Assembly (NCBI RefSeq): GCF_006345805.1 | Contig: NC_043007.1 | Coordinates: forward strand, 18,786,001-18,850,000 | DNA from: Octopus sinensis | Taxonomy: Eukaryota | DNA length: 64,000 bases | Direction of reading: 5' to 3' | Shown: positions 8-54,840 of the stretch, one piece after another | How the letters are laid out: every line of letters starts with the position of its first letter | How positions within the stretch are numbered: the first letter of the stretch is position 1 | The notes under the pieces: model-generated | Seen by the model: the letters and a program-made list of their open reading frames with translations, nothing else | What the model was told of the DNA's origin: nothing | Database searches by the model: none | Position numbers and translations under genes: made by a program

Positions 8-402
8 AGGCGCAGGAGTGGCTGTGTAGTAAGTAGCTTGTTTACCAACCACATGGTTCCAGGTTCAGTCCCACTGCGTGGCACCTTGGGCAGGTGTCTT
101 CTACTATAGCCTTGGGCCGACCAAAGCCTTGTGAGTGGATTTGGTAGACGGAAACTGAAAGAAGCCTGTCGTATATATGTATGCATATATATATATGCGT
201 GTGTGTTTTTGTGTGTCTGTGTTTGCCCCCTAGCATTGCTGGTGTGTTTATGTCCCCCGTTACTTAGCGGTTCGGCAAAAGAGACCGATAGAATAAGTAC
301 TGGGCTTACAAAGGAATAAGTCCCGGGGTCGAATTGCTCGATTAAAGGCGGTGCTCCAGCATGGCCGCAGTCAAATGACTGAAACTAGTAAAAGAGTAAA
401 AA
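8..402 (+). mobile_element. Family A tRNA-type SINE (most abundant family in the window)
   Basis: Head aggcgcaggagtggctgtgtggtaag...ggttcagtccc, internal TA/TG microsatellite, tail gcggtgctccagcatggccgcagtcaaatgactgaaac..gtaaaagag. More than 12 related copies in the window. Confidence 0.85.
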
Positions 403-429
403 AGAGAGAGAGGTAAAATAAAGGGGAAC

Positions 430-650
430 TGGTGTTAGAGCGTCGGATAGAATGCTACGCGGTATTTGGTCTGCCGCAACGTTCTGAGTTCAAATTCCGC
501 ATAGGTCGACTTTGCCTTTCATCCTTTCGGAGTCGATTAAATAAGTACCAGTTACGCACTGGGTCGATATAATCGACTTAATCCGTTTGTCTGCCCTTGT
601 TTGTCCTCTCTGTGTTTAACCCCTTGTGGGTAGTAAAGAAATAGGTATTT
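430..650 (+). mobile_element. Family B SINE (central gtcgactttgcctttcatcctttcggggtcgat..aagtaccag domain)
   Basis: The same head (gttctgagttcaaattcc), core and tail recur more than 15 times. The core resembles the conserved central domain of Nin/Meta-type SINEs (recalled, not searched). Confidence 0.75.
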
Positions 651-8243: not shown

Positions 8244-8450
8244 ATGTTTGTGTGTCTGTGTTTGTACCCCCAACATCGCTCGACAACCGATGGTGGTGTT
8301 TTTACTTTCTCGTAACCTAGCGGTTCGGCAAAAGAGACCGACGGAATAAGTACTCGGCTTACAAAGAATAAGTCCTGGAGTCGATTTGCTCGATTAAAGG
8401 CAGTGCTCCAGCATGGACGCAGTTAAATGACTGAAACAAGTAAAAGAGTA
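8012..8450 (+). mobile_element. Family A SINE
   Basis: Full head-to-tail match to 8-402. Confidence 0.85.
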
Positions 8451-8454
8451 TACA

Positions 8455-8773
8455 CAGATACATACATACATACATACATACACACATACATACACGTATA
8501 CATATACATACATACATACATACATACATACATACATACATTCATGCATACATACATTCATGCATACATGCATACATACATACATACACACATACATACA
8601 TACATACATACATACATACATACATGCATACATACATACATACACACATACATACATACATGCATACATGCATCCATACATACACACAAACATACATACA
8701 TACATGCATACATACATAAATACATACATACATGCATACATACATAAATACATACATACATACATATATACAT
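8455..8773. repeat. (CATA)n/(TACA)n microsatellite, left flank of the LINE
   Basis: Direct inspection. The same repeat resumes at 11794-12000. Confidence 0.95.
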
Positions 8774-11700
8774 GTTAGTTAGTTAGTTAGTTAGTTAGTT
8801 AATTTGGCTCAAAAGCAAATAGCAAGGCCATGTAGGGGGACATGGAGTTATGTACAGGGTGGTGTTCATGTAAAGAGTTCAGGCCACTTGAGGTCCAGGG
8901 AGGCTTTGAACAAAGCGGTCGTCGGCATCTTCACCATCTCGTCTGGCAGCTTGTTCCACGGATCCGCACCCGGACGGAGAAAGCTCCTCTCCTTCGATTG
9001 AGATGAAATCGTCGCAGGTAGAGCTTTTCGGAATGACCCCCGCAGCCGACGCTCCGGAGCAGGAGTGAAGAACAGCTCTTTCGAGAGGTTACACTTCCCG
9101 CTTATGATGTTGTGGGCGAGAATGAGATCACCACGGCGGCGGCGTTTTTCAAGAGAACAAAGGTCGAGCGTCCTCAGCCTTTCTTCGTAGGACAACTTTT
9201 TGAGACCATGAACCATGCGGGTAGCCAGCCTCTGGACTCTTTCGAGGTGCTGTATGTCTTCGAGGAGATAAGGAGAAGAGGCTTGAATCCCGTACTCCAA
9301 TATGGGTCTCACCAGCGTGACATAGAGTGGCAGGAATATGGCTGCTGTGAGCATTCCGAATGACCGTCGAATCAAAAACAGAATTCCGCGCGCTTTGTTG
9401 GCAGCATGGACGCACTGGGCCGAAGCGAAAGGAGGAATCCACCAAGATACCAGGTCCTTTACCTGATCGGTCCTCTCCAGCAGCAGACGACCCGGCTCGA
9501 AATCAAGTTGAGTTGCAGGAGTAATAGCCGACAGGCAGATGACAGACACTTTGACACGTTCAGACACAGGTCCCAATCGTTAGACCACTTCCAAATTTGG
9601 TGGAGGCATCGACGAATCCTCTATACTACCGCGAGGAGCGACCAGTTTGATATCGTCGCAAATAGAAGGGTGTGTTGCGTGAGGTCGTCGGCAAGTCATT
9701 TATGAAGACTAAGAACAAAAAGGGCCCAAGCACTGAACCTTGAGGCCGCCACTGCTCGCACTGGAGACGTCGGACCGCGAACCATTAACTTGAACTTGGA
9801 AGGAGCGATCTGAGAGGAAGGCACCAACCCATCGTACAATATCCGGATGGAAACTATATGCTTGAAGCTTGACAAGTAGTAGGCGGTGGTTTACCGAGTC
9901 AAAAGCTTTGGCAAAGTCCAATAAAACGATGTCGACAGCATCACTATCATCGAGGATGCGCGTCACCAATTCTTCCATTACTAGTAAGTTGGTCAAGCAT
10001 GATCTCTTCGGTACGAAGCCGTGTTGGGAATCAGTGATCGAGGCTGTGTTTAGGAGGCGGAGCATCATACTTTTCTTAAGGATGGTTTCGAACATCTTGC
10101 TGATTATTGATGTAAGGGAAACCGGTCGGTAGTTAAGCGGGTCTTCGCGGCTCCCTTTCTTGAAAATTGGGCAGATTATCGCTGTTCTTCAGTCTGCAGG
10201 TATAACACCCGTCGCCAATGACATATTGAATAGTCGTGTTAAGGGCTCGCAGATGACCGGAGCCAACGCTTTGATAACCCGTGGGTGTATGCCGTCAGGG
10301 CCGTGACCCTTGTTGACATCGAGGCCTTGAATAACACGTTTGACTTGGTCCCGCGTGATGATCAATCGAAGCATTGGAGGTACCGATCTATCAAATGGAG
10401 GGGGTTCACGACCATCATCTTGTTTGAAAATAGTTGAAAAAGCCTCGGCAATAATTGACTCTGTTGATAAGGGTCCTCAATCGATACGCCTGTTGAGTCT
10501 ACCAACGTTGCAATCTGGTTGTTCAAGCGGGAATTCCGCTGGACATGGGCAAAGAAGGTTTTTGGATTGCTACTGGCATTTGCCGCGATTTTGTATTCAT
10601 AACTGAAGCGTTCTTTCTTTTCAATTTTCACGGCTCGGTCTCGTTGAGTTTTGTACACCTCAAAAGCTGCAGTCGAATCCAGATTTTTGAATTCAGCCCA
10701 AGCAATATCTCTGAGTCGACGTTCTCGTTTAACCTTCTTCGTCACTCAGGGCTTGTGTTTCTTCCTCTTGGGAAGTCCAACGGGAACTGCCTGGTCAGTC
10801 AAACAGATTACATATGCTTTGAGGGATGACCATAGTTCGTCAACTGAGGACAACGTCATCAGGGAACGCCAGTCCAGAAGCGCGGAAGCCTCGGTTAGAA
10901 TTTCAAGATTAATTGCAGAGAAGACTCTACGTGGCAGCGAAGTAATCGTGGGCGTGGAAAAAGTTGTGTGCATGACGAACTTCAGGACCGCATGATCACT
11001 CTTGGCAGAGGGGCGCACACAGATACGTCTGACACTGATCTTGGATAGCGGGAGAATACCAGATCTAGCATAGATGGCTGCTGCCCAGACCGATGCCTTG
11101 TCGGATATTCAACATGTTGCGATAGAAAACAATCTTCAGCCACGTCAAGAAGGGCCTGGCCGAACCGGGAAGATGTTGTACAATTGATGCGGGCCAATCG
11201 ATCGTGGGAGCGTTGAAGTCGCCTAGTACCAAGCAGTCATGCGAAGCTGAAACGAATCTTATCGCTTCGAGTAGATGAGCATCGTCCTGGGGGTCGGCTA
11301 GAGGCGGCCTGTAGACAGCCAACACGGGCAGGCAAAACTCAGATAGGCTCAGCTTGCAATAAACGGCATCGAATTTGGTTGTAGGTTGAGCATTTGTGGG
11401 TAGAATACCGCAGGACGGTTTGTGCTCAGACTTAACATACACAGCAACACCTCCACCTCGCCTTTTTCCTCTGTCACATCTGAAAAGGACGTAGCCCTGC
11501 AGGTGGATCTCTGAGTCCTTTACTGCTGGAGTCAGCCAAGTCTCGGTGATAGCTATCACATCAGGGGAGTCGCGTAGGGCCAATGTAAATAGTTCACTGA
11601 ACTTTGGGAATAAGGAGCACGAGTTGGTGTAGACGATGCTGAGCTGTGAAGTCTGAGGGGCGGGAGTTGGGGAACAAGCAGAATAAAGGGCATCAGAGAT

Positions 11701-11793
11701 AGCATCGTTGACGGGGGTATCAACTTCACTTCGATTTGCCCTCACATCACTTTCCCTGTCAGCACTACAGCATGGGACCAGAGGTAGGACTTG
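8774..11793 (-). mobile_element. CR1-group non-LTR retrotransposon, near-complete APE+RT ORF broken by frameshifts, (TAAC)n 3' tail
   Basis: APE motifs IVYTN, AITETWL, GGGVAVYV and SDHAVL. RT motifs QHGFVPKRSCLTNLL, LDFAKAFDSV, G(V)PQGSVLGP (frameshifted) and F(A)DDIKL. C-terminal RRRRGDLI and WNKLP. Tail (TAAC)n at 8774-8801. Confidence 0.95.
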
Positions 11794-12951
11794 TACATAC
11801 ATACATACATGCATGCATACATGCATACATACATATATACATACATACATACATACATACATACACACACATACATACATACATGCATACCTGCATACAT
11901 ACATACATACATACATACATGGATACATACATACATACATACATGGATACATACATACATACATACATGCATACATACATACATAGATACATACTTACTT
12001 ACATATATGCATATAAGTGTCTGGGTGTCTGTGTCTATATATATCTCCAGGGCAACGCTTTCCAATATGTCCTCCTTTTTAAATTCCCTTTTAAGACTCT
12101 TTCATCAAAAGCACTCCATCCATCCATCCATCCATCCATCCATCCTCCATCCATCCATCCAGCCAGCCAGCCAGCCAGCTAGCCAGCCAGCCACAGCCTG
12201 CTCAGTTACTAAAAGACGTCCACATCTGCGTTATCCACACGCGTCCTTCCTTGCTTAAAACCCGACGATTAGATTTCATAGTGATTTGACCGCGCTTTCT
12301 TGAAGGTCAACATGTTACAACGGAGGCTGCAACATGGGTCGGGGGGTTGCGAATATGCTTAATATAGCTGAGAGGCAACAGGGGGGAAAATCGAATTACA
12401 ACAGAAATGAAGTCTAAAGAGAAAGAACAGAAGGAAAGAAAGAAGCGACATTAATCTTACATCGCCAGATTTCGCTCTTCACTTAGAATCAGTTTTCTGT
12501 AAGGAATAAATTGAATTTCTTTTGATTCTATAGAATGCAGCATGTTCATTCCGTTATGGGCAGGATTATTCGTTTCTGCAAAGGATTATCTCTGACTACA
12601 GGAGATTATTCTTGTCTACATGCCATTATACATATTATAAAATTATGAAAAATTAAAACGTTACTCTTTTAACCGGTAAACTCGTCGGATGTGTGTGTGT
12701 CTGTGTCTGTGTGCGTGTGTGCGTGTGTGCGCGCACGCTTGTGTGTATATATATATATATGCGTATATAATGTATACATACATATACTATACATATCCGT
12801 CCATACGTACAAACGTACAAATACACGCATACACTCTCATGGACATATATATATCAACGCAAGCCTATGCATACGCGCTGCTATTAGGGTTAGGGTATGT
12901 ATGCACGTGAGTGTGTATATGTATATATATATATATATACAAATATTTATA

Positions 12952-13074: not shown

Positions 13075-13130
13075 ATAATAATAATAATCTTAATGAAATT
13101 ATTGTATACAGTGCTCAGTTGCACCACAAC
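13075..13130 (-). mobile_element. Very short 3' tail fragment of the LINE found at 27660-28200
   Basis: gtggtgcaactgagcactgtatacaataatttcattaagattattatt matches 28157-28200. Confidence 0.7.
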
Positions 13131-23789: not shown

Positions 23790-25181
23790 TATATATATAT
23801 AACGGGAAGCTTTATGAAAATAAACAAAAGACGAAGGCAGGTGGAAAACAAACGAACAATTGTATTAGTATGGCGCTCAGGAAATATAAATAAAACAAGT
23901 CTTTAACGTTTCGAGCCTACGCTCTTCAACAGAAAGATACATAGAGAGAGAAAAACACAGAAAGAAGGAGAGAAAAAAAATGCGTGCAGTAGCTAACGAA
24001 TCAACATGGCGATCTGATTCGGCCAGAGGTCAAAGATCAAACATGAGACGCGAGAGCGAAATAAGGGGAGATAATAGGGTTGATAAATGGGTTGAGGGAC
24101 CAGCTAAAAGTGCGTGGGAGGGGTCTGGATGTGTGTATGTATAGGGTTGGTGTATGTATTAGTATGTATAAGGGTGTGGTGTGTGTGTGTGTGGTGTGTA
24201 TGAGAGAGTATTAGTGCGTAAGATTGGTCTGGACGTGCGTATGTATGGGGTTGGTGTATGTATTAGTATGTATTAGTATGTATTAGTACGTATTGGTATG
24301 TATAGGTGTGTTGTGTGTGTGTGTGAGAGAGTATAAGTGCGTATGCGGGGTCTGGACGTGTGTATGTATAGGGTGGTGTAAGTATTAGTATGTACTAGTA
24401 TGTATTAGTACGTATTAGTATGTATTAGTTGGTGTGTGTATTAGTATGGCACATCATATGTGATGTGATGTGTAAAGTCATGTGGTGTAGTGAGGAGAAG
24501 AGGGGAGGGGGAGAAGAGGGGGAGAGAACGGGAGAGGAAGAAGAGGGGGAGGAGAAGGGGGAAGAGGAGACGATGGGGGAGAAGGAAGGTGAGGAGGGGG
24601 ATGAAGGAGGAAAGAGGGAGAGGGGGAGAGAGAGAAGGGGAGAGAGGGAGTGAGGGAGCAGAGGGAAGGGGAAGAGGGAGGGAGAAAGAGGGAAGAAGGG
24701 AAGGGGAGTAGGGGTGAAAGGATGAAGGACTGAAGAAGTAGGGGTCGGGGGGAGAAAGGATAGGTGAGGAGGGGGGAGAGGGGGGTTAGATGAGGAGGGG
24801 GGAGAGTTGAGACCAAATGGCGTATAAGAGCGAAGAGAGAAGATTAATTCCTGTTCACGGCGCAAACGGGAATCCGGATGGCCTCTGTGTAAGGACAAAC
24901 CGAACACAGATAGGTGTTGCAAGGAGTGACCGGTGGAGCGGAAATGGCGTGAGACCGGTGTGTCGTTCGCAAGGTGGATGTCACGAAGGTGTTCCGCGAA
25001 CCGGTCAGCCAAGCGGCGTCCCGTTTTTCCGATGTACAAGGAATTGCAGAGAGAGCAAGAGATGCAATAGATAATATTGCTGGAGGTGCAGGTGAAGGAG
25101 TGGATGATGGGATAGGGTCGATGGTGGGTGCTAGTGAGGCGGGTGGTGTTGGAGAGGTAAGGGCAAGTGCGGCAACGTGGG
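23790..25181 (-). mobile_element. Penelope-like element 3' part: GIY-YIG endonuclease domain, purine/pyrimidine tract, minisatellite and terminal repeat
   Basis: Minus strand reads PRCRTCPY...FTCTSSNIIYCISCSLCNSLYIGKTGRRLADRFAEH...RLRREQELIFSLRSYTPFGLN (CxxC plus IY/YIG plus the conserved R, E and N). It is cut at 25182 by a family A SINE fragment. Confidence 0.92.
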
Positions 25182-25449
25182 CGGGCTTCTTTCAGTTTTC
25201 ATCTATCAAATCTATTCGCAAGGATTTGGTCGGCCCGAGGCTATAGCAGATGACACTCGCCCAAGGTGCCACGCAGTGGGACTGAACCTGGAACCATGTG
25301 GTTGGTAAGCAAGCGTATATCTAGGATAACAGTGGTAAGCTTTAACTCCATTCACTCCGGTAACTTCAACTTCAGCAACCGGCTTTGTATGTCACGGAAT
25401 ATTTGTATGAGACAGAAGTCCAAATGGACTTTTACAGCTATGTTATAGT

Positions 25450-27964
25450 AAATTATTGACCATCTTACAAAGTTTGAGCACCTTTTCAAACTCCACCTGT
25501 CTAACACATGTGGACATGCTTACAAAGTCAGAAAACAGCACAGCTCCCATGACTTTCGGAAACATTTTTCATGCTAAGAGTTGCTGAAGCATGGAACAAA
25601 CTGAAGTATGGAACAAATCTTCAGCAACATGCAGCCAAGAGAATAACCTCCATCCGGTATTTGCCATATTTTGAACGCCTTACTTCCCTGGGCATGGACA
25701 CATTGAAACTCCGACGTCTGGCAGCTGACTTGGCAGACACCCATAAAATTATTAACCATCTTACTAACAATAACTCTGAGCACCTTTTCAAACTCCACCT
25801 GTCTAACACCCATGGACATGTTTATAAAGTCAGAAAACAGCACAGCTCCCATGACTTTCGGAAACATTTTTCATGCTAAGAGTTGCTGAAGCATGGAACA
25901 AACTGAAGTATGGAACAAATCTTCAGCAACATGCAGCCAAGAGAATAACCTCCATCCGGCATATGCCATATTTTGAACGCCTTACTTCCCTGGGCATGGA
26001 CACATTGAAACTCCGACGTCTGGCAGCTGACACCCATAAAATTATTAACCATCTTACTAACAATAATTCTGAGCACCTTTTCAAACTCCACCTGTCTAAC
26101 ACCCATGGACATGTTTATAAAGTCAGAAAACAGCACAGCTCCCATGACTTTCGGAAACATTTTTTCATGCTAAGAGTTGCTGAAGCATGGAACAAACTGA
26201 AGTATGGAACAAATCTTCAGCAACATGCAGCCAAGAGAATAACCTCCATCCGGCATATGCCATATTTTGAACGCCTTACTTCCCTGGGCATGGACACATT
26301 GAAACTCCGACGTCTGGCAGCTGACACCCATAAAATTATTAACCATCTTACTAACAATAACTCTGAGCACCTTTTCAAACTCCACCTGTCTAACACCCAT
26401 GGACATGTTTATAAAGTCAGAAAACAGCACAGCTCCCATGACTTTCGGAAACATTTTTTCATGCTAAGAGTTGCTGAAGCATGGAACAAACTGAAGTATG
26501 GAACAAATCTTCAGCAACATGCAGCCAAGAGAATAACCTCCATCCGGCATTTGCCATATTTTGAACGCCTTACTTCCTGGGCATGGACACATTGAAACTC
26601 CGACGTCTGGCAGCTGACACCCATAAAATTATTAACCATCTTACTAACAATAACTCTGAGCACCTTTTCAAACTCCACCTGTCTAACACCCATGGACATG
26701 TTTATAAAGTCAGAAAACAGCACAGCTCCCATGACTTTCGGAAACATTTTTTCATGCTAAGAGTTGCTGAAGCATGAACAAACTGAAGTATGGAACAAAT
26801 CTTCAGCAACATGCAGCCAAGAGAATAACCTCCATCCGGCATATGCCATATTTTGAACGCCTTACTTCCTGGGCATGGACACATTGAAACTCCGACGTCT
26901 GGCAGCTGACACCCATAAAATTATTAACCATCTTACTAACAATAACTCTGAGCACCTTTTCAAACTCCACCTGTCTAACACCCATGGACATGTTTATAAA
27001 GTCAGAAAACAGCACAGCTCCCATGACTTTCGGAAACATTTTTTCATGCTAAGAGTTGCTGAAGCATGGAACAAACTGAAGTATGGAACAAATCTTCAGC
27101 AACATGCAGCCAAGAGAATAACCTCCATCCGGCATTTGCCATATTTTGAACGCCTTACTTCCCTGGGCATGGACACATTGAAACTCCGACGTCTGGCAGC
27201 TGACACCCATAAAATTATTAACCATCTTACTAACAATAACTCTGAGCACCTTTTCAAACTCCACCTGTCTAACACCCATGGACATGTTTATAAAGTCAGA
27301 AAACAGCACAGCTCCCATGACTTTCGGAACATTTTTTCATGCTAAGAGTTGCTGAAGCATGGAACAACTGAAGTATGGAACAAATCTTCAGCAACATGCA
27401 GCCAAGAGAATAACCTCCATCCGGCATTTGCCATATTTTGAACGCCTTACTTCCCTGGGCATGGACACATTGAAACTCCGACGTCTGGCAGCTGACACCA
27501 TAAAATTATTAACCATCTTACTAACAATAACTCTGAGCACCTTTTCAAACTCCACCTGTCTAACACCCATGGACATGTTTATAAAGTCAGAAAACAGCAC
27601 AGCTCCCATGACTTTCGGAAACATTTTTCATGCTAAGAGTTGCTGAAGCATGGAACAAACTGAAGTATGGAACAAATCTTCAGCAACATGCAGCCAAGAG
27701 AATAACCTCCATCCGGCATTTGCCATATTTTGAACGCCTTACTTCCCTGGGCATGGACACATTGAAACTCCGACGTCTGGCAGCTGACTTGGCAGACACC
27801 CATAAAATTATTAACCATCTTACTAACAATAACTCTGAGCACCTTTTCAAACTCCACCTGTCTAACACCCATGGACATATTTATAAAGTCAGAAAACAGC
27901 ACAGCTCCCATGACTTTCGGAAACATTTTTTCACGCTGAGAGTTGCTGAAGCATGGAACAAACT
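25450..27964 (+). repeat. Tandem array of about 8.5 units (294 or 303 bp) derived from the C-terminal coding end of a CR1-type LINE
   Basis: Units start near 25604, 25906, 26200, 26494, 26786, 27079, 27371 and 27663. Each encodes ...RITSIRHLPYFERLTSLGMDTLKLRRLAAD...RKHFFMLRVAEAWNKL. Confidence 0.96.
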
Positions 27965-28202
27965 GCCGGCATCAGTTGTTAGTTGTCGGAGCACTGCATC
28001 CTTCAAAACTTCCATGCTTCTTGAGATTCGCCAACACTACACCTGATTTTCTCCCCTCCATACACACACAAGCATTTATCTGACTCATACAGTGTTCGCT
28101 TCCCAGACATTTGTACATTACTGCATTTACTCTATATACACTTTCTGACAAGTTGTGGTGCACCTGAGCACTGTATACAATAATTTCATTATTATTATTT
28201 AA
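27663..28202 (+). mobile_element. CR1-type LINE 3' end (last unit runs into the native stop at 28046, 3' UTR and (ATT)n tail)
   Basis: WNKLPASVV C-terminus, then UTR ending cacctgagcactgtatacaataatttcattattattatt. Confidence 0.9.
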
Positions 28203-28489: not shown

Positions 28490-29030
28490 AGGCCCGAAAT
28501 TTTGGGGAAAGTGGGGACCAGTCGATTAGATTGACAGCTGTACGTAACTGGTACTCAATTTATCGACCCCGAAAGGATGAAAGGCGAAGTCGACCTCGGC
28601 GGAATTTGAACTCAGAACGTAACGGCACACGAAATACCACTAAGCACTTCGCCAGCTCGCCGCCTTGAATGCAATTTTGGGGAAGTGGGGACCAGTCGAT
28701 TACATCGACCCTTGTATTATGTCGATTATGCTACAACAGAATGAAAAATATCACGTTTTCAGCAACTGCCTAATAATGTCTAAGATACAACTTTCTGTGA
28801 CATGAGATATTTGCTTAAATTAGTTATAATATTTATTTCTTTATTGCCCTCAAGGGGCTAAACATAGAGGGGACAAACAAGGACAAAGGGATTAAGTCGA
28901 TCCCAGTACGTAACTGGTATTTATTTAATCAACCCAGAAAGGATGAAAGGCGAAGTTGACCTTGGCGGAATTTGAACTCAAAACGTAACGGCAGACGAAA
29001 TACCACTAAGCATTTCGCCCGGCGTGCTAA
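28490..29030 (-). mobile_element. Cluster of family B SINE copies
   Basis: Repeated gaaaggatgaaaggcgaagtcgacctcggcggaatttgaactca. Confidence 0.75.
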
Positions 29031-31819: not shown

Positions 31820-32992
31820 TCTCTGTAGTTGGGATGGTTGCTTCGAGAGTGTAATGACTAGAATAAGAATAGCCTGGGCAAAGTTCAGGGAGCTCCTACC
31901 TCTGCTGGAAACGATGGGCCTCTCGCTCATGGTGAAAGGTAGACTATACAATGCATGTGTGTGAACTGCCATGCTACATGGCAGTGAAACATGGGCCATG
32001 AATGATGAGGACATGCATAGGCCTGAAAGAAATGAAGCTAGTATGATCTGCTGGATGTGTAATGTCAGTGTGCATACATGACAGTGTAAGTGCCCTGAGA
32101 GAAAAGTTGGGCATAAGAAGCATCAAATGTGGTGTGCAAGAGAGGTAACTGCACTGTTATGGCCATGTGTTATGTATGAATGAAGACAGCTGTGTGAGGA
32201 AGTGCCACTCTCCAACTGTGGAAGAGGTAAACCCAGGAAGACATGGGATGAGGTGGTGAAGCATGACCATCGAACATTGGGCCTCACAGAGGCAATGACA
32301 GAATACCAGGACCTTTGAAGATATGCTGTGATTGAGAAGACCTGGCAACTAAAGTGAGATCACAGCCACACATGTCCAGCCCTGTTAAGAATACTCTTGA
32401 TGTTTTGGGCGATATGACATGCTTGAGAAGACCTGTTCAGTCAAGTAAAACCAATATTGTAGCTGGGGCCAGTGCCCCATGACTGGCTCTCATGCTGGCA
32501 GAGCATAAAAAGCACCCTCAAGATGTGGTCAATGCCAGGTCCACCAGACGGGCCCCAATGCCAGTGGCACATAAAAAGCACCAACTGAACGTGACATGCA
32601 GTACATCCAGACTGGCTCCCGTGTCGATGGCACATAAAAAGCACCATCCGAATGTGGTTGATACCAGGTCCACCTGACTGGCTCCTGTGCTGGTGGCACA
32701 TAAAAAGCACCAACCAATCATGACTGATGCTAGTACGCTCTGACTGGCTCCTGCGCTGGTGACACGTAAAAAGCACCATCTGAACATGATTGTTGCCAGG
32801 TCCACTTTGCCAGTGGCTCGTAAACAGCCCCCCCCCTACACTCTCGGAGTGGTTGGCATTAGGAAGGGCATGGAGCTGTAGAAACTCTGCCAGACTAGCT
32901 TGGAGCCTGGTGCATCCGCTGGTTCTCCAGACCTCAGTCAAACCATCCAACCCATGCCAGCATGGAAAACTAACGTTAATCAATGATGATGA

Positions 32993-52522: not shown

Positions 52523-53065
52523 CTGGAATGAAGAACACAGAAAGATGAGAAACATTGGTAAAATTCATAAGAGAAACAACAGGCAACAATTTGAAAGAGA
52601 AAACAGCAATAGGCTTACCAGTGGGATTCGAAACCTGCATCTACTCATCATCATCATCATCGTTTAAATTTGTTTTCCATGCTAGCATGGGTTGGACGGT
52701 TCGACCGGGGTCTGGGAAGCCAGGAGGCTGCACCACTCTCCAATCTGATCTGACAAAGTTTCTACAGCTGAATGCCCTTCCTAACGCCAACCACTCCGAG
52801 AGTGTAGTGGGTGCTTTTACGTGCCACCAGCATGGGGGCCAGTCAGGCGGTACTGGCATCAGCCATACACAAAATGGTGCTGTTTTTATGTACCACCAGC
52901 ACAGGAGCCAGTCTGGCAGCACTGGCAACGACCATGCTCGAATGGTGCTGTTTTTATGTGCCACCGGCATGGGAGCCAGTCAGCAGTCCTGGCAATGGTC
53001 ATGCTCGAATGGTGCTTCTAATGTTCCACCAGCATGGGTGTCAATCAGGCGGTACTGTCATAAAG

Positions 53066-53640: not shown

Positions 53641-54319
53641 ATTATATCATTCATTTATATTTCATACACATTTGCATTTGATGCTACAGTTTCACAAAAA
53701 CTAAAATGTTTATTATTGCAATTCAATAAAGAAGGATAAATATTCTTTTTTTTTTCAGCGATCCCCAATTGGGAGTTTTCGAAAAATTTATCATAATTTC
53801 CAAAATAATTCACATATGAAGAAAATTTAAATACTATATATTATTTTAACTCCTAAGACACCTGGCAAAACCCAAATATATGAATGAAAAAATTTGGTAG
53901 TTTATGGGTTAATGTAAACAAATATTAGTCTCAAATCGTTGGCACAAGGCCAGTAATTCTAGGGAGGGGCACGGTCAATGAAATTGAACCCAGTGTTAAA
54001 CTGGTACTAAATATTATCAGTTTGGAAAGGATGAAAGGCAAAACTGACCATGGCAGGATTTGAACTTACAACGTAAAGATGGACAACATGTCGCTGAACA
54101 TTTTTTGCCCAGCATGCTCCCAACTCTGCCAGCCCATAGCCTTACCATTATCATCATTTAATGTCCACTTTCTATGCCTGGCATGGGTTGGACGGTTTGA
54201 CTGAGGACTGGCAAGCCAGAAGGTGGCATCAGGCTCCAATCTGTTCTTGTAAGGTTTCTACAGTTTGATGCCCTTCCTAATGCCAACCACTCTGAGAATG
54301 TAATGGGAGCTTTTTATGT

Positions 54320-54840
54320 GCCACCAGCATGGGGGTCAGTCAGACAGCACTGGCATTGACCACACTCAAATGGGGCTTTTTACATGCCACCGGCACAGGA
54401 GCCATTCAGGGTGGGAGGGCTGGCATCAACCATGTTTGGATGGTGCTTTTTATGTGCCACCAGCATGGGGGGCAGTCAGACAACAGTGGAATTGACCACA
54501 CTCAAATGGTACTTTTTATGTGCCACGAGCACGGGAGCCATTCAGGGTGGGAGGGCTGGCATCAACCATGTTCAAATGGTGCTTTTTATGTGCCACCAAC
54601 ATGAGGGTCAATCAGACAGCACTAGCATTGACCACACTCAAATGGTGCTTTTAACGTGCCACCAGTATGGGGGTCAGTCAGACAACAGTAGTATTGACCA
54701 CACTCAAGTGGTGCTTTTTACATGCCACGAGCACAGGAACCATTTGGGTTGGGAGGGCTGGCATCAACCATGTTCAAATGGTGCTTTTAATGTTCCACCG
54801 GCACAGGAGCCATTCAGGTGACACTGGCATTGGCCATGAA
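54320..54840 (+). repeat. Minisatellite of about 63 bp with two alternating unit types, within an RTE 3' UTR fragment
   Basis: Unit order is A-B-A-B-A-A-B plus a partial unit. A contains cagtcagacagcac and B contains cattcagggtgggagggctggcatc. Confidence 0.85.

What the first reader, a model, noticed from the sequence alone, without database searches (positions are those of the whole stretch)
25450..28202. In-frame tandem satellite built from the C-terminal coding end of a LINE
Seen: about 8.5 head-to-tail copies of the last roughly 100 codons of a CR1-type ORF2, and only the last copy continues into the native stop, UTR and (ATT)n tail. Intact unit lengths are multiples of 3 (294 and 303) and the junction has no stop, so the frame reads across units (240-aa ORF at 25873-26595). 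The remaining breaks are mostly 1-nt homopolymer indels. Every junction carries a 17-bp imperfect duplication (ctgaagcatggaacaaa / ctgaagtatggaacaaa). The first and last full units keep a 9-bp segment that the six inner units lack, the pattern expected from homogenisation of the interior. Inference: a young TE-derived satellite made by RT template jumping, rolling-circle amplification or unequal crossover, which could encode a novel repeat protein of up to about 800 aa if transcribed.
Basis: partly seen in the sequence, partly recalled or inferred. Interest (0 to 1): 0.7.

Follow-up and report, generated by a model that had tools for sequence, protein, structure and literature searches.

The report
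Tandem array from dead LINE tail
A broken, 5'-truncated CR1-like jumping gene in an octopus genome has had a ~294-bp piece of its coding end copied head-to-tail 8.4 times; this is an ordinary kind of transposon-derived repeat, is not a gene, and is mainly useful because it shows clearly how such arrays start and grow.

Summary
Window 25447-27962 holds one partial and eight full head-to-tail units (292-303 bp, 97% alike) of the C-terminal domain of a CR1-like LINE ORF2. Only the last unit runs into the native stop, 3' UTR and (ATT)4 tail. The host is an octopus; the closest matches are Octopus vulgaris proteins at 93-94% identity. All eight junctions carry the same complex scar, a 17-nt templated filler, so they descend from one founding event. 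Diagnostic sites show an old 1.5-mer whose left and right copies differ by ~8%. Its inner units are right-5'/left-3' chimeras, the product expected of unequal exchange. Units U1-U8 differ by only 0.3-1.4%, so the expansion is recent. A 9-bp-deleted variant fills the six inner units. The coding idea fails: the LINE frame is broken in six of the eight full units, conserved residues have decayed at CpGs, and no database protein carries the junction. The only two other genomic copies of this LINE family that I could fetch also carry out-of-register 3' duplications. Their breakpoints cluster at the same three short sites, which hints at reverse-transcriptase template switching as the seed. It is a new member of a known kind. 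Copy number and the 1-nt indels need read support.

The parts
25447..25600 (+). U0: partial leftmost unit (3' ~154 bp of the unit). It is the 5'-truncation point of the LINE fragment and is diverged from the other units (8 private substitutions plus a 6-bp deletion).
   Evidence: The upstream flank is not LINE: a SINE copy lies at 25182-25314 and unique DNA at 25315-25446.
25601..25902 (+). U1: full unit of 302 bp. It keeps the native 9-bp TTGGCAGAC and has T5 instead of T6.
25903..27659 (+). U2-U7: six inner units (294, 294, 292, 293, 292, 292 bp). All lack the 9 bp, which removes the near-invariant D-L of the domain. They differ from one another by 0.3-1%.
27660..27962 (+). U8: last unit of 303 bp. 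It keeps the 9 bp and the native CACGCTGAG at its 3' end, where U0-U7 have CATGCTAAG.
25584..25617 (+). Founding junction scar: CTGAAGCATGGAACAAA followed by CTGAAGTATGGAACAAA. The same doublet recurs at 25886, 26180, 26474, 26767, 27059, 27352 and 27643.
   Evidence: Comparison with native copies (L001 6376-6425 and 6650-6690) shows the second 17-mer is a templated filler and not native LINE sequence.
27963..28046 (+). Native end of ORF2 (PASVVSCRSTASFKTSMLLEIRQHYT plus stop), present once.
28047..28200 (+). Native 3' UTR and (ATT)4 microsatellite tail (28188-28199).
   Evidence: The same terminus is present as a 48-bp extremely 5'-truncated copy at 13083-13130 (-).

Best explanation
This is a dead, 5'-truncated insertion of a CR1-like LINE in an octopus genome. 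Its 3' coding end became a local tandem array in two stages. Stage 1 was old, at or near the time of insertion. A single out-of-register template switch joined position B, just after ...GCTGAAGCATGGAACAAA and 27 codons before the stop, to position A about 300 nt upstream, near CTGGAAGCCGTTCAG. It left a 17-nt templated filler. The result was a 1.5-mer: a partial left copy (today U0), the junction, then a right copy running into the native stop, UTR and (ATT)n tail (today U8). The most economical route is reverse transcriptase jumping back once during target-primed reverse transcription and then aborting; this step is inferred. Stage 2 was recent. Unequal homologous exchange between the left and right copies made a chimeric full unit with a right-type 5'/middle and a left-type 3' end. 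One copy then lost 9 bp, and that variant was amplified to fill the interior. The array is non-coding DNA with no required function.
For: The array and its register are shown. LINE identity: 93-94% identity to Octopus vulgaris proteins, with the native upstream sequence seen in P0010/L001. The domain lies at the extreme C-terminus of 900-970-aa APE+RT proteins, and the hits include CR1 fragments from a bird. Single founding event: all 8 junctions share the same complex scar, including its C-to-T mismatch. Chimeric inner units: U0-U7 share the derived CATGCTAAG while U8 and the L001/L002 copies keep CACGCTGAG. U1-U8 share three derived states (CTTACT, CCCATGG, TTTAT) where U0 keeps the ancestral A and C and shows an independent CpG decay (CATGTGG). 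Two time scales: U0 and U8 differ by ~8-9%, while U1-U8 differ by 0.3-1.4%. Early founding: two of the three CpGs in the overlap were still intact when the copies split. RT origin favoured: the left copy starts mid-unit and abuts non-LINE DNA. A DNA-level duplication of an already truncated insert cannot produce that without an extra deletion. L002 has the same architecture with different breakpoints. In L001, a 121-bp x 6.9 array of the same LINE abuts a 5'-truncated LINE of another family exactly at the unit boundary, and no remainder of the first LINE follows it. Breakpoints in the three loci pair up at three sites; the chance probability is 0.003-0.012, judged post hoc.
Against: Only three loci of the family could be examined, and they were ascertained through the repeated region itself. 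A more distant copy (L003) has no duplication. No target-site duplication of 7 bp or more flanks the insert, so the insertion boundaries rest on homology alone. The filler and microhomology would equally fit a replicative polymerase switching templates. Gene conversion could mimic the chimeric pattern. The excess of 1-nt homopolymer deletions, about equal in number to the substitutions and all of them deletions, suggests consensus errors, so fine details and copy number may be wrong.
Confidence: 0.7

Rival explanations
1. The founding duplication arose after insertion, at the DNA level, by replication slippage, microhomology-mediated template switching or unequal recombination between the CTG(G)AAGC motifs. 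A later deletion removed the 5' part of the left copy. Expansion then proceeded as in the main model.
For: Sites A and B share CTG(G)AAGC, and the junction has a templated filler typical of replicative template switching. Octopus DNA in the window and in the fetched loci holds several other mid-size tandem duplications.
Against: It needs an extra 5' deletion here, and independently another in L002, to explain left copies that start mid-unit next to non-LINE DNA. The two halves are about as diverged as unrelated family members, and CpGs were still intact at the split, which places the event near insertion.
Confidence: 0.17
2. A newer LINE copy was joined out of register by microhomology to an older resident fragment of the same family, with loss of the intervening target DNA. 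Under this reading U0 is a separate, older insertion.
For: U0 has more private changes than the U8 lineage (8 against 4). At two sites (ACA, GCT) it matches more distant subfamilies L003 and L004.
Against: The asymmetry is not significant (8 against 4). About 0.6-0.9 chance matches to outgroup states are expected, a hand estimate from the alignment. U0 shares the family-specific states CCTGTCT and TTTCGG with all units. No remainder of an older copy follows the tail.
Confidence: 0.08
3. Assembly artefact: the array, its copy number or its 1-nt indels are products of mis-assembly or poor polishing in a repeat.
For: Every 1-nt difference is a homopolymer contraction, and these are about as numerous as the substitutions. 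That is unusual for real divergence and typical of noisy long-read consensus.
Against: The units carry ordered, unit-specific variants: the 9 bp in U1 and U8 only, the A/T variant in U2, U3 and U5, a C deletion shared by the neighbours U4 and U5, and distinct edge states. A spurious expansion would not create these. At 2.5 kb the array is shorter than ordinary long reads. Comparable arrays exist in an independent assembly (L001, L002).
Confidence: 0.05
4. The array encodes, or is evolving into, a repeat protein built from the LINE C-terminal domain.
For: The intact units are multiples of 3, the junction has no stop, and the open reading stretch across units U2-U4 is 246 codons, with a 240-aa ATG-initiated ORF inside it.
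Against: The LINE frame hops between all three frames. The conserved VQRRATK has become LQQHAAK and TRGH has become THGH, by CpG-type changes. The inner units have deleted the near-invariant D-L. No database protein has the junction, and exact look-ups of four array ORFs found nothing. The minus strand has similar-sized ORFs in every unit, so open frames here carry little weight.
Confidence: 0.02

Closest known systems
TE-derived satellite and tandem repeats from LINE ORF2 or 3' regions: the chicken HinfI repeat with a partial CR1 ORF2, PROsat and Pvc20 from L1 ORF2, and the common cetacean satellite from the L1 3' end (review PMC9659126)
   Same: The tandem unit is an internal fragment of a LINE that includes ORF2 coding sequence. 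The array is non-coding and evolves in concert.
   Different: Here there is one 2.5-kb euchromatic-looking array still attached to its parent LINE tail, not an abundant genome-wide satellite. Because it is at such an early stage, both the founding junction and the first exchange product can still be read.
Amplification of a single founding junction by unequal exchange: the tandem-like R1 arrays of Drosophila melanogaster with identical junctions (PMC2718515), and TE dimers as seeds of satellites (McGurk and Barbash 2018, PMC5932611, listed and known to me; not read here)
   Same: Identical junctions between units imply one original event that was then amplified. A dimer provides the homology for later expansion.
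   Different: Those dimers come from double insertion of whole elements at one site. Here the dimer is an out-of-register internal join within one LINE 3' end, so the unit has no tail or UTR.
RT template jumping or switching by non-LTR retrotransposon reverse transcriptases, and chimeric or rearranged LINE insertions: R2 end-to-end template jumping (Bibillo and Eickbush 2004, cited in PMC3510499), and L1 chimeras and 5' inversions by twin priming (my own knowledge)
   Same: Microhomology and extra nucleotides at the junction. A 5'-truncated second pass. In L001, one LINE family is joined to another at the unit boundary.
   Different: The known cases mostly give chimeras, inversions or deletions. 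A backward jump on the same kind of template that seeds a direct 3' duplication at recurrent sites is only inferred here, from three loci.

Membership tests
CR1-type (CR1/L2-like) LINE, 3' end of ORF2 | The C-terminal domain (VQRRATK...Y.ERL...RR..DL...TRGH...RK.FF..RV...WN.LP..VV) is homologous to the one at the extreme C-terminus of APE+RT ORF2 proteins, including avian CR1. | tested here: met
   6096 hits at E<=1e-3. The match lies at residues ~790-950 of 900-970-aa proteins. Hits from the bird Mycteria americana reach E ~1e-18. P0022 has Exo_endo_phos plus RVT_1.
CR1-type (CR1/L2-like) LINE, 3' end of ORF2 | Continuity of this domain with a reverse-transcriptase domain in the same element lineage. 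| tested here: met
   P0010 and L001 extend the native sequence upstream. The O. bimaculoides protein P0013 overlaps that stretch at 70% identity and carries RVT_1.
CR1-type (CR1/L2-like) LINE, 3' end of ORF2 | The 3' end carries a short microsatellite tail instead of poly(A), and copies are 5'-truncated. | tested here: met
   (ATT)4 lies at 28188-28199. A 48-bp copy with the same terminus and ATT repeats lies at 13083-13130. L002 ends ...TTTCATTATATTTA.
CR1-type (CR1/L2-like) LINE, 3' end of ORF2 | Placement inside the CR1 clade proper, rather than L2, Rex1 or another related clade, by RT phylogeny. | not tested
   No full-length copy of this family was available and no reference tree was built.
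Satellite DNA (TE-derived) | Head-to-tail array of near-identical units with concerted evolution: a homogenised interior and divergent edges. | tested here: met
Satellite DNA (TE-derived) | Abundant: long arrays and/or many arrays across the genome. | not testable with these tools
   No octopus genome could be scanned. There is no second array in the 64-kb window or in L001-L004, and no junction-bearing protein.
Protein-coding tandem-repeat gene | An uninterrupted reading frame across the units. | tested here: not met
   The frame changes between or within most units, and the longest open LINE-frame stretch is 246 codons. This depends on the assembled 1-nt indels being real.
Protein-coding tandem-repeat gene | Purifying selection on conserved residues of the domain. 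| tested here: not met
   Conserved R, R, T, R and D-L are replaced or deleted, mostly by CpG transitions.
RT template-switch retrocopy (seeded at insertion) | The second-pass copy is 5'-truncated inside the unit and abuts non-element DNA. The junction shows microhomology or extra templated bases. | tested here: met
   Window. L002.
RT template-switch retrocopy (seeded at insertion) | The whole composite is bounded by one target-site duplication, with an empty site in relatives. | tested here: inconclusive
   No shared k-mer of 7 or more at the two edges. TSDs are often short or absent in this kind of LINE (my own knowledge). No orthologous locus was available.

The most novel reading that the evidence does not exclude
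This octopus CR1-like LINE family may seed its own tandem arrays. During target-primed reverse transcription the RT would switch backwards at a few preferred sites: A (CTGGAAGCC), B (CTGAAGCATGG) and C (ACAAGCATG). That would create out-of-register 3' dimers or multimers at insertion, and these would later expand by unequal exchange. This would be a built-in LINE-to-satellite route that could feed the repeat-rich cephalopod genome.
Probability: 0.25. Interest if true: 0.55.

Novelty: new member of a known kind. Interest (0 to 1): 0.3.

Why it matters
TE-derived tandem repeats are common, but the first steps are rarely caught. Here the parent LINE tail, the single founding junction with its templated filler, the divergent edge copies and the chimeric first exchange product are all still readable in one 2.7-kb locus. 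That makes it a clean worked example of how a satellite can be born from a retrotransposon fragment. If the recurrent breakpoints seen in three loci hold up genome-wide, they would point to a specific RT template-switching habit as the seed. That can be tested with existing octopus assemblies.

Tried and rejected
(1) Pfam gave no family for the unit peptide, because the domain is not modelled there. I established homology through sequence searches instead.
(2) Exact-product look-ups of four array ORFs (138, 240, 94 and 97 aa) found nothing. There is therefore no independent assembly or read support, and the source assembly was not identified.
(3) A second homolog search, using the segment upstream of the unit to get an unbiased sample of copies, returned only 3 proteins. 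A family census was not possible.
(4) I considered that U0 comes from a different subfamily or is significantly older. After polarising with outgroups, the private changes are 8 against 4, which is not significant, and only about 2 outgroup-like states remain. My first cruder count of 3 against 11 mixed chimeric units and was dropped.
(5) I looked for an RNA structure explanation of the breakpoints. The MFE fold of the 3' 546 nt has z = -3.2 but places nothing telling at sites A, B or C. The 11-nt inverted repeat GAAGCATGGAA/TTCCATGCTTC shows no compensatory change in L003 or L004.
(6) No TSD was found.
(7) Rolling-circle amplification has no specific support. The mosaic of variants among the inner units and the edge chimeras fit exchange better, but it is not excluded for the U2-U7 block.
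(8) I found no paper on a cephalopod satellitome or on this array.

Full report
**1. Observation**

Tandem Repeats Finder reports a single strong array at 25475-27965: period 294, 8.4 copies, 97% matches, score 4666. It also reports a 17-nt doublet at each unit boundary.

I anchored on CTGAAGTATGGAACAAA and aligned the units. This gives a partial unit U0 (25447-25600) and eight full units U1-U8 of 302, 294, 294, 292, 293, 292, 292 and 303 bp.
- The 9-bp TTGGCAGAC is present only in U1 and U8.
- All 1-nt length differences are deletions in short homopolymer runs.
- Only U8 continues into PASVV...QHYT-stop (stop at 28044-28046), a ~140-nt UTR and (ATT)4 at 28188-28199.
- The 240-aa ORF at 25873-26595 is real.

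So the description is accurate. One correction: the unit is not the last 100 codons. It ends 27 codons before the stop.

**2. What the unit is**

The unit plus native end matches Octopus vulgaris predicted proteins at 93-94% identity, and ENA-derived fragments at 66-82%. P0010 and its locus L001 give the native sequence upstream of the unit...HLEFASPVWNPFLAQDINRLEAVQRCATKRITSIR....

An exhaustive profile-free search finds 6096 relatives. The match lies at the extreme C-terminus of 900-970-aa proteins. One of these, P0022, has APE and RT domains. The hits include CR1 fragments from a bird, Mycteria americana. An O. bimaculoides relative links the upstream stretch to RVT_1.

The tail is a short ATT microsatellite. 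The same terminus occurs as a 48-bp, extremely 5'-truncated copy at 13083-13130.

'CR1-type LINE ORF2 end' is therefore supported in the broad sense. Clade-level phylogeny was not done.

**3. The insert and its flanks**

Upstream of U0 there is no LINE sequence. A SINE copy lies at 25182-25314 (at least 10 copies in the window), followed by 132 bp of unique DNA. The native LINE segment upstream of the unit is absent from the whole window. No target-site duplication of 7 bp or more is seen.

The object is a 5'-truncated LINE fragment. Its leftmost copy starts in the middle of the unit.

**4. The junction**

The native sites are:
- Site A: ...ATCAATCGTCTGGAAGCCGTTCAGCGATGTGCAACCAA...
- Site B...GAGAGTTGCTGAAGCATGGAACAAACTGCCGG... 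(L001)

The array junction reads ...GTTGCTGAAGCATGGAACAAA | CTGAAGTATGGAACAAAT | CTTCAGCAACATGCAGCCAAGAG... The A-side homology resumes at CTTCAG (native GTTCAG). The middle 17-18 nt are not native. They are a copy of the preceding 17 nt with one mismatch.

Both native sites carry CTG(G)AAGC, and CTG also follows site B natively. This is a microhomology junction with a templated insertion, the signature of a polymerase switching templates.

All eight junctions carry the same scar. They therefore descend from one event. The same logic has been applied to identical junctions in tandem-like R1 arrays (PMC2718515).

**5. History read from diagnostic sites**

I used L001, both L002 copies and the more distant L003 and L004 as outgroups.
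- U0-U7 share the derived CATGCTAAG at the unit's 3' end. U8 keeps the CACGCTGAG seen in the L001 and L002 copies.
- U1-U8 share three derived states in the middle: CTTACT, CCCATGG and TTTAT.
- At those sites U0 keeps the ancestral A and C. At ACACC[CG]TGG it shows an independent CpG decay, TG where the other units have CA.

The ancestral state was therefore a 1.5-mer: L (U0), junction, R (U8). The inner units are chimeras with an R-type 5'/middle and an L-type 3' end. That is exactly the product of an unequal crossover between L and R within the ~50-bp identical stretch between the diagnostic sites.

L and R differ by ~8-9% (8 private substitutions and a 6-bp deletion in U0, 4 in the U8 lineage). 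U1-U8 differ by 0.3-1.4%. So the founding event is old and the expansion is recent. The 9-bp deletion arose in one unit and was amplified into U2-U7. Two of three CpGs were still intact when L and R split, and their divergence equals that between unrelated family members (4-7%). This places the founding event at or near insertion.

**6. Other copies of the family**

L002 (O. vulgaris OX597841.1) has the same architecture with different breakpoints. A left copy starts mid-element next to non-LINE DNA and ends in the UTR at ...AAGCATGTATCTGAC. It is joined directly to a right copy that starts at AACCAAGAG (near site A) and runs to the tail. The two copies differ by 4.4% in substitutions, or 7.6% with gaps.

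L001 (CATOCA020000001.1) has a 121-bp x 6.9 array whose unit runs from AAGCATGG (site B) to CACACAC, just before AAGCATG in the UTR (site C). That is a 7-nt microhomology. This array abuts a 5'-truncated LINE of another CR1-like family, with an (AACT)n tail, exactly at the unit boundary. No remainder of the first LINE follows it.

The six breakpoints pair up at q19/32, q290/303 and q416/425. For random breakpoints P = 0.003-0.012, judged post hoc.

A more distant copy, L003, has no duplication. L004 has a 5' inverted duplicate, which looks like twin priming.

A left copy that begins mid-unit at non-LINE DNA is what RT gives if it jumps back once and then aborts. A DNA-level duplication of an already truncated insert needs an extra deletion to produce it, here and again in L002. 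I therefore favour an RT template switch as the seed, at roughly even odds against all the alternatives together. The sample is small and was ascertained through the repeated region itself.

**7. Coding idea**

The LINE frame hops between all three frames, and the longest open LINE-frame stretch is 246 codons. Against the family alignment, VQRRATK has become LQQHAAK and TRGH has become THGH. The inner units have deleted the near-invariant D-L. Most of these changes are CpG transitions, which indicates neutral decay.

No protein in the searched collections contains the junction, and exact look-ups of four array ORFs failed. The minus strand also has 78-97-aa ORFs in every unit. The repeat-protein reading is very unlikely.

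**8. Caveats**

The 1-nt homopolymer deletions are about as numerous as the substitutions, and all are contractions. Some may be consensus errors. Copy number needs spanning reads. Genome-wide abundance could not be checked, because no searchable octopus genome was available.

**9. Comparison and verdict**

LINE-derived tandem repeats that include ORF2 fragments are known: the chicken HinfI/CR1 repeat, PROsat, Pvc20 and the cetacean satellite (PMC9659126). Expansion from a founding dimer is an established route (PMC5932611, from my own knowledge of the paper; PMC2718515).

This is a new member of a known kind and a tidy early-stage example. It comes with one modestly novel lead: recurrent out-of-register 3' junctions at three sites in this LINE family. 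Interest 0.3.

Noticed in passing
L001 6665-7500 and 7500-7885: An independent 121-bp x 6.9 tandem array of the same LINE (ORF end plus start of the UTR). It has two junction types in blocks, and TRF also reports a 360-bp, 3-unit higher-order period. It is joined exactly at a unit boundary to a 5'-truncated LINE of another CR1-like family with an (AACT)n tail. The rest of the first LINE's UTR is missing downstream. This may be a chimeric retrocopy.
   Followed up: partly
L002 5716-6512: A 1.75-mer of the same LINE: a mid-element left copy ends in the UTR and is joined to a right copy that starts near site A and runs to the tail. The O. vulgaris annotation calls the two halves as separate genes (P0006 and P0001).
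   Followed up: partly
window 13083-13130 (-): A 48-bp, extremely 5'-truncated copy of the same LINE 3' terminus with ATT repeats, embedded in AT/TA microsatellite.
   Followed up: partly
window 8866-11976 (-): A second, different CR1-like LINE, about 30% identical in the C-terminal domain. The ORF at 11065-11976 hits Exo_endo_phos. The C-terminal-domain ORF lies at 8866-9576. It has an (AACT)n-type tail followed by an (ATAC)n tract at 8450-8773. The middle part is interrupted by stops.
   Followed up: partly
window 27948-27958 and 28010-28020: A perfect 11-nt inverted repeat, GAAGCATGGAA / TTCCATGCTTC, with site B as its 5' arm. It is weaker and shows no compensatory change in the distant copies L003 and L004, so it is probably incidental to the EAWN and SML codons.
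   Followed up: yes
window 24425-25039 (-) and 24494-24806: An ORF beginning MYIGKTGRRLADRFAEHL..., which from memory resembles a GIY-YIG nuclease motif of Penelope-like elements. Pfam gave no hit at E<=1. It is followed by a long purine-rich, low-complexity tract just upstream of the array's flank.
   Followed up: partly
window 25182-25314 and 28520-28653, with many other sites: Two abundant SINE-like families flank the array, with at least 10 and at least 20 copies in the 64-kb window respectively. The region is very TE-dense.
   Followed up: partly
window 32504-32805, 52815-53057, 54309-54733: Three arrays of 66-136-bp units that share one sequence family by eye (GCTTTTTATGTGCCACCAGCATGG... 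and its reverse complement). This suggests another dispersed element with internal tandem repeats.
   Followed up: no
P0018, P0021, P0146 (Mycteria americana predicted proteins): Bird CR1-derived predicted proteins contain two tandem stretches of the same C-terminal domain. In P0021 the end of the ORF is joined directly to a point about 110 aa upstream. Out-of-register duplications of CR1 ends may not be restricted to octopus.
   Followed up: no
L004 80-221 (-) next to 229-622 (+): A copy of a related subfamily with a 5' inverted duplicate segment, the pattern expected from twin priming. The contig is only 654 bp.
   Followed up: no
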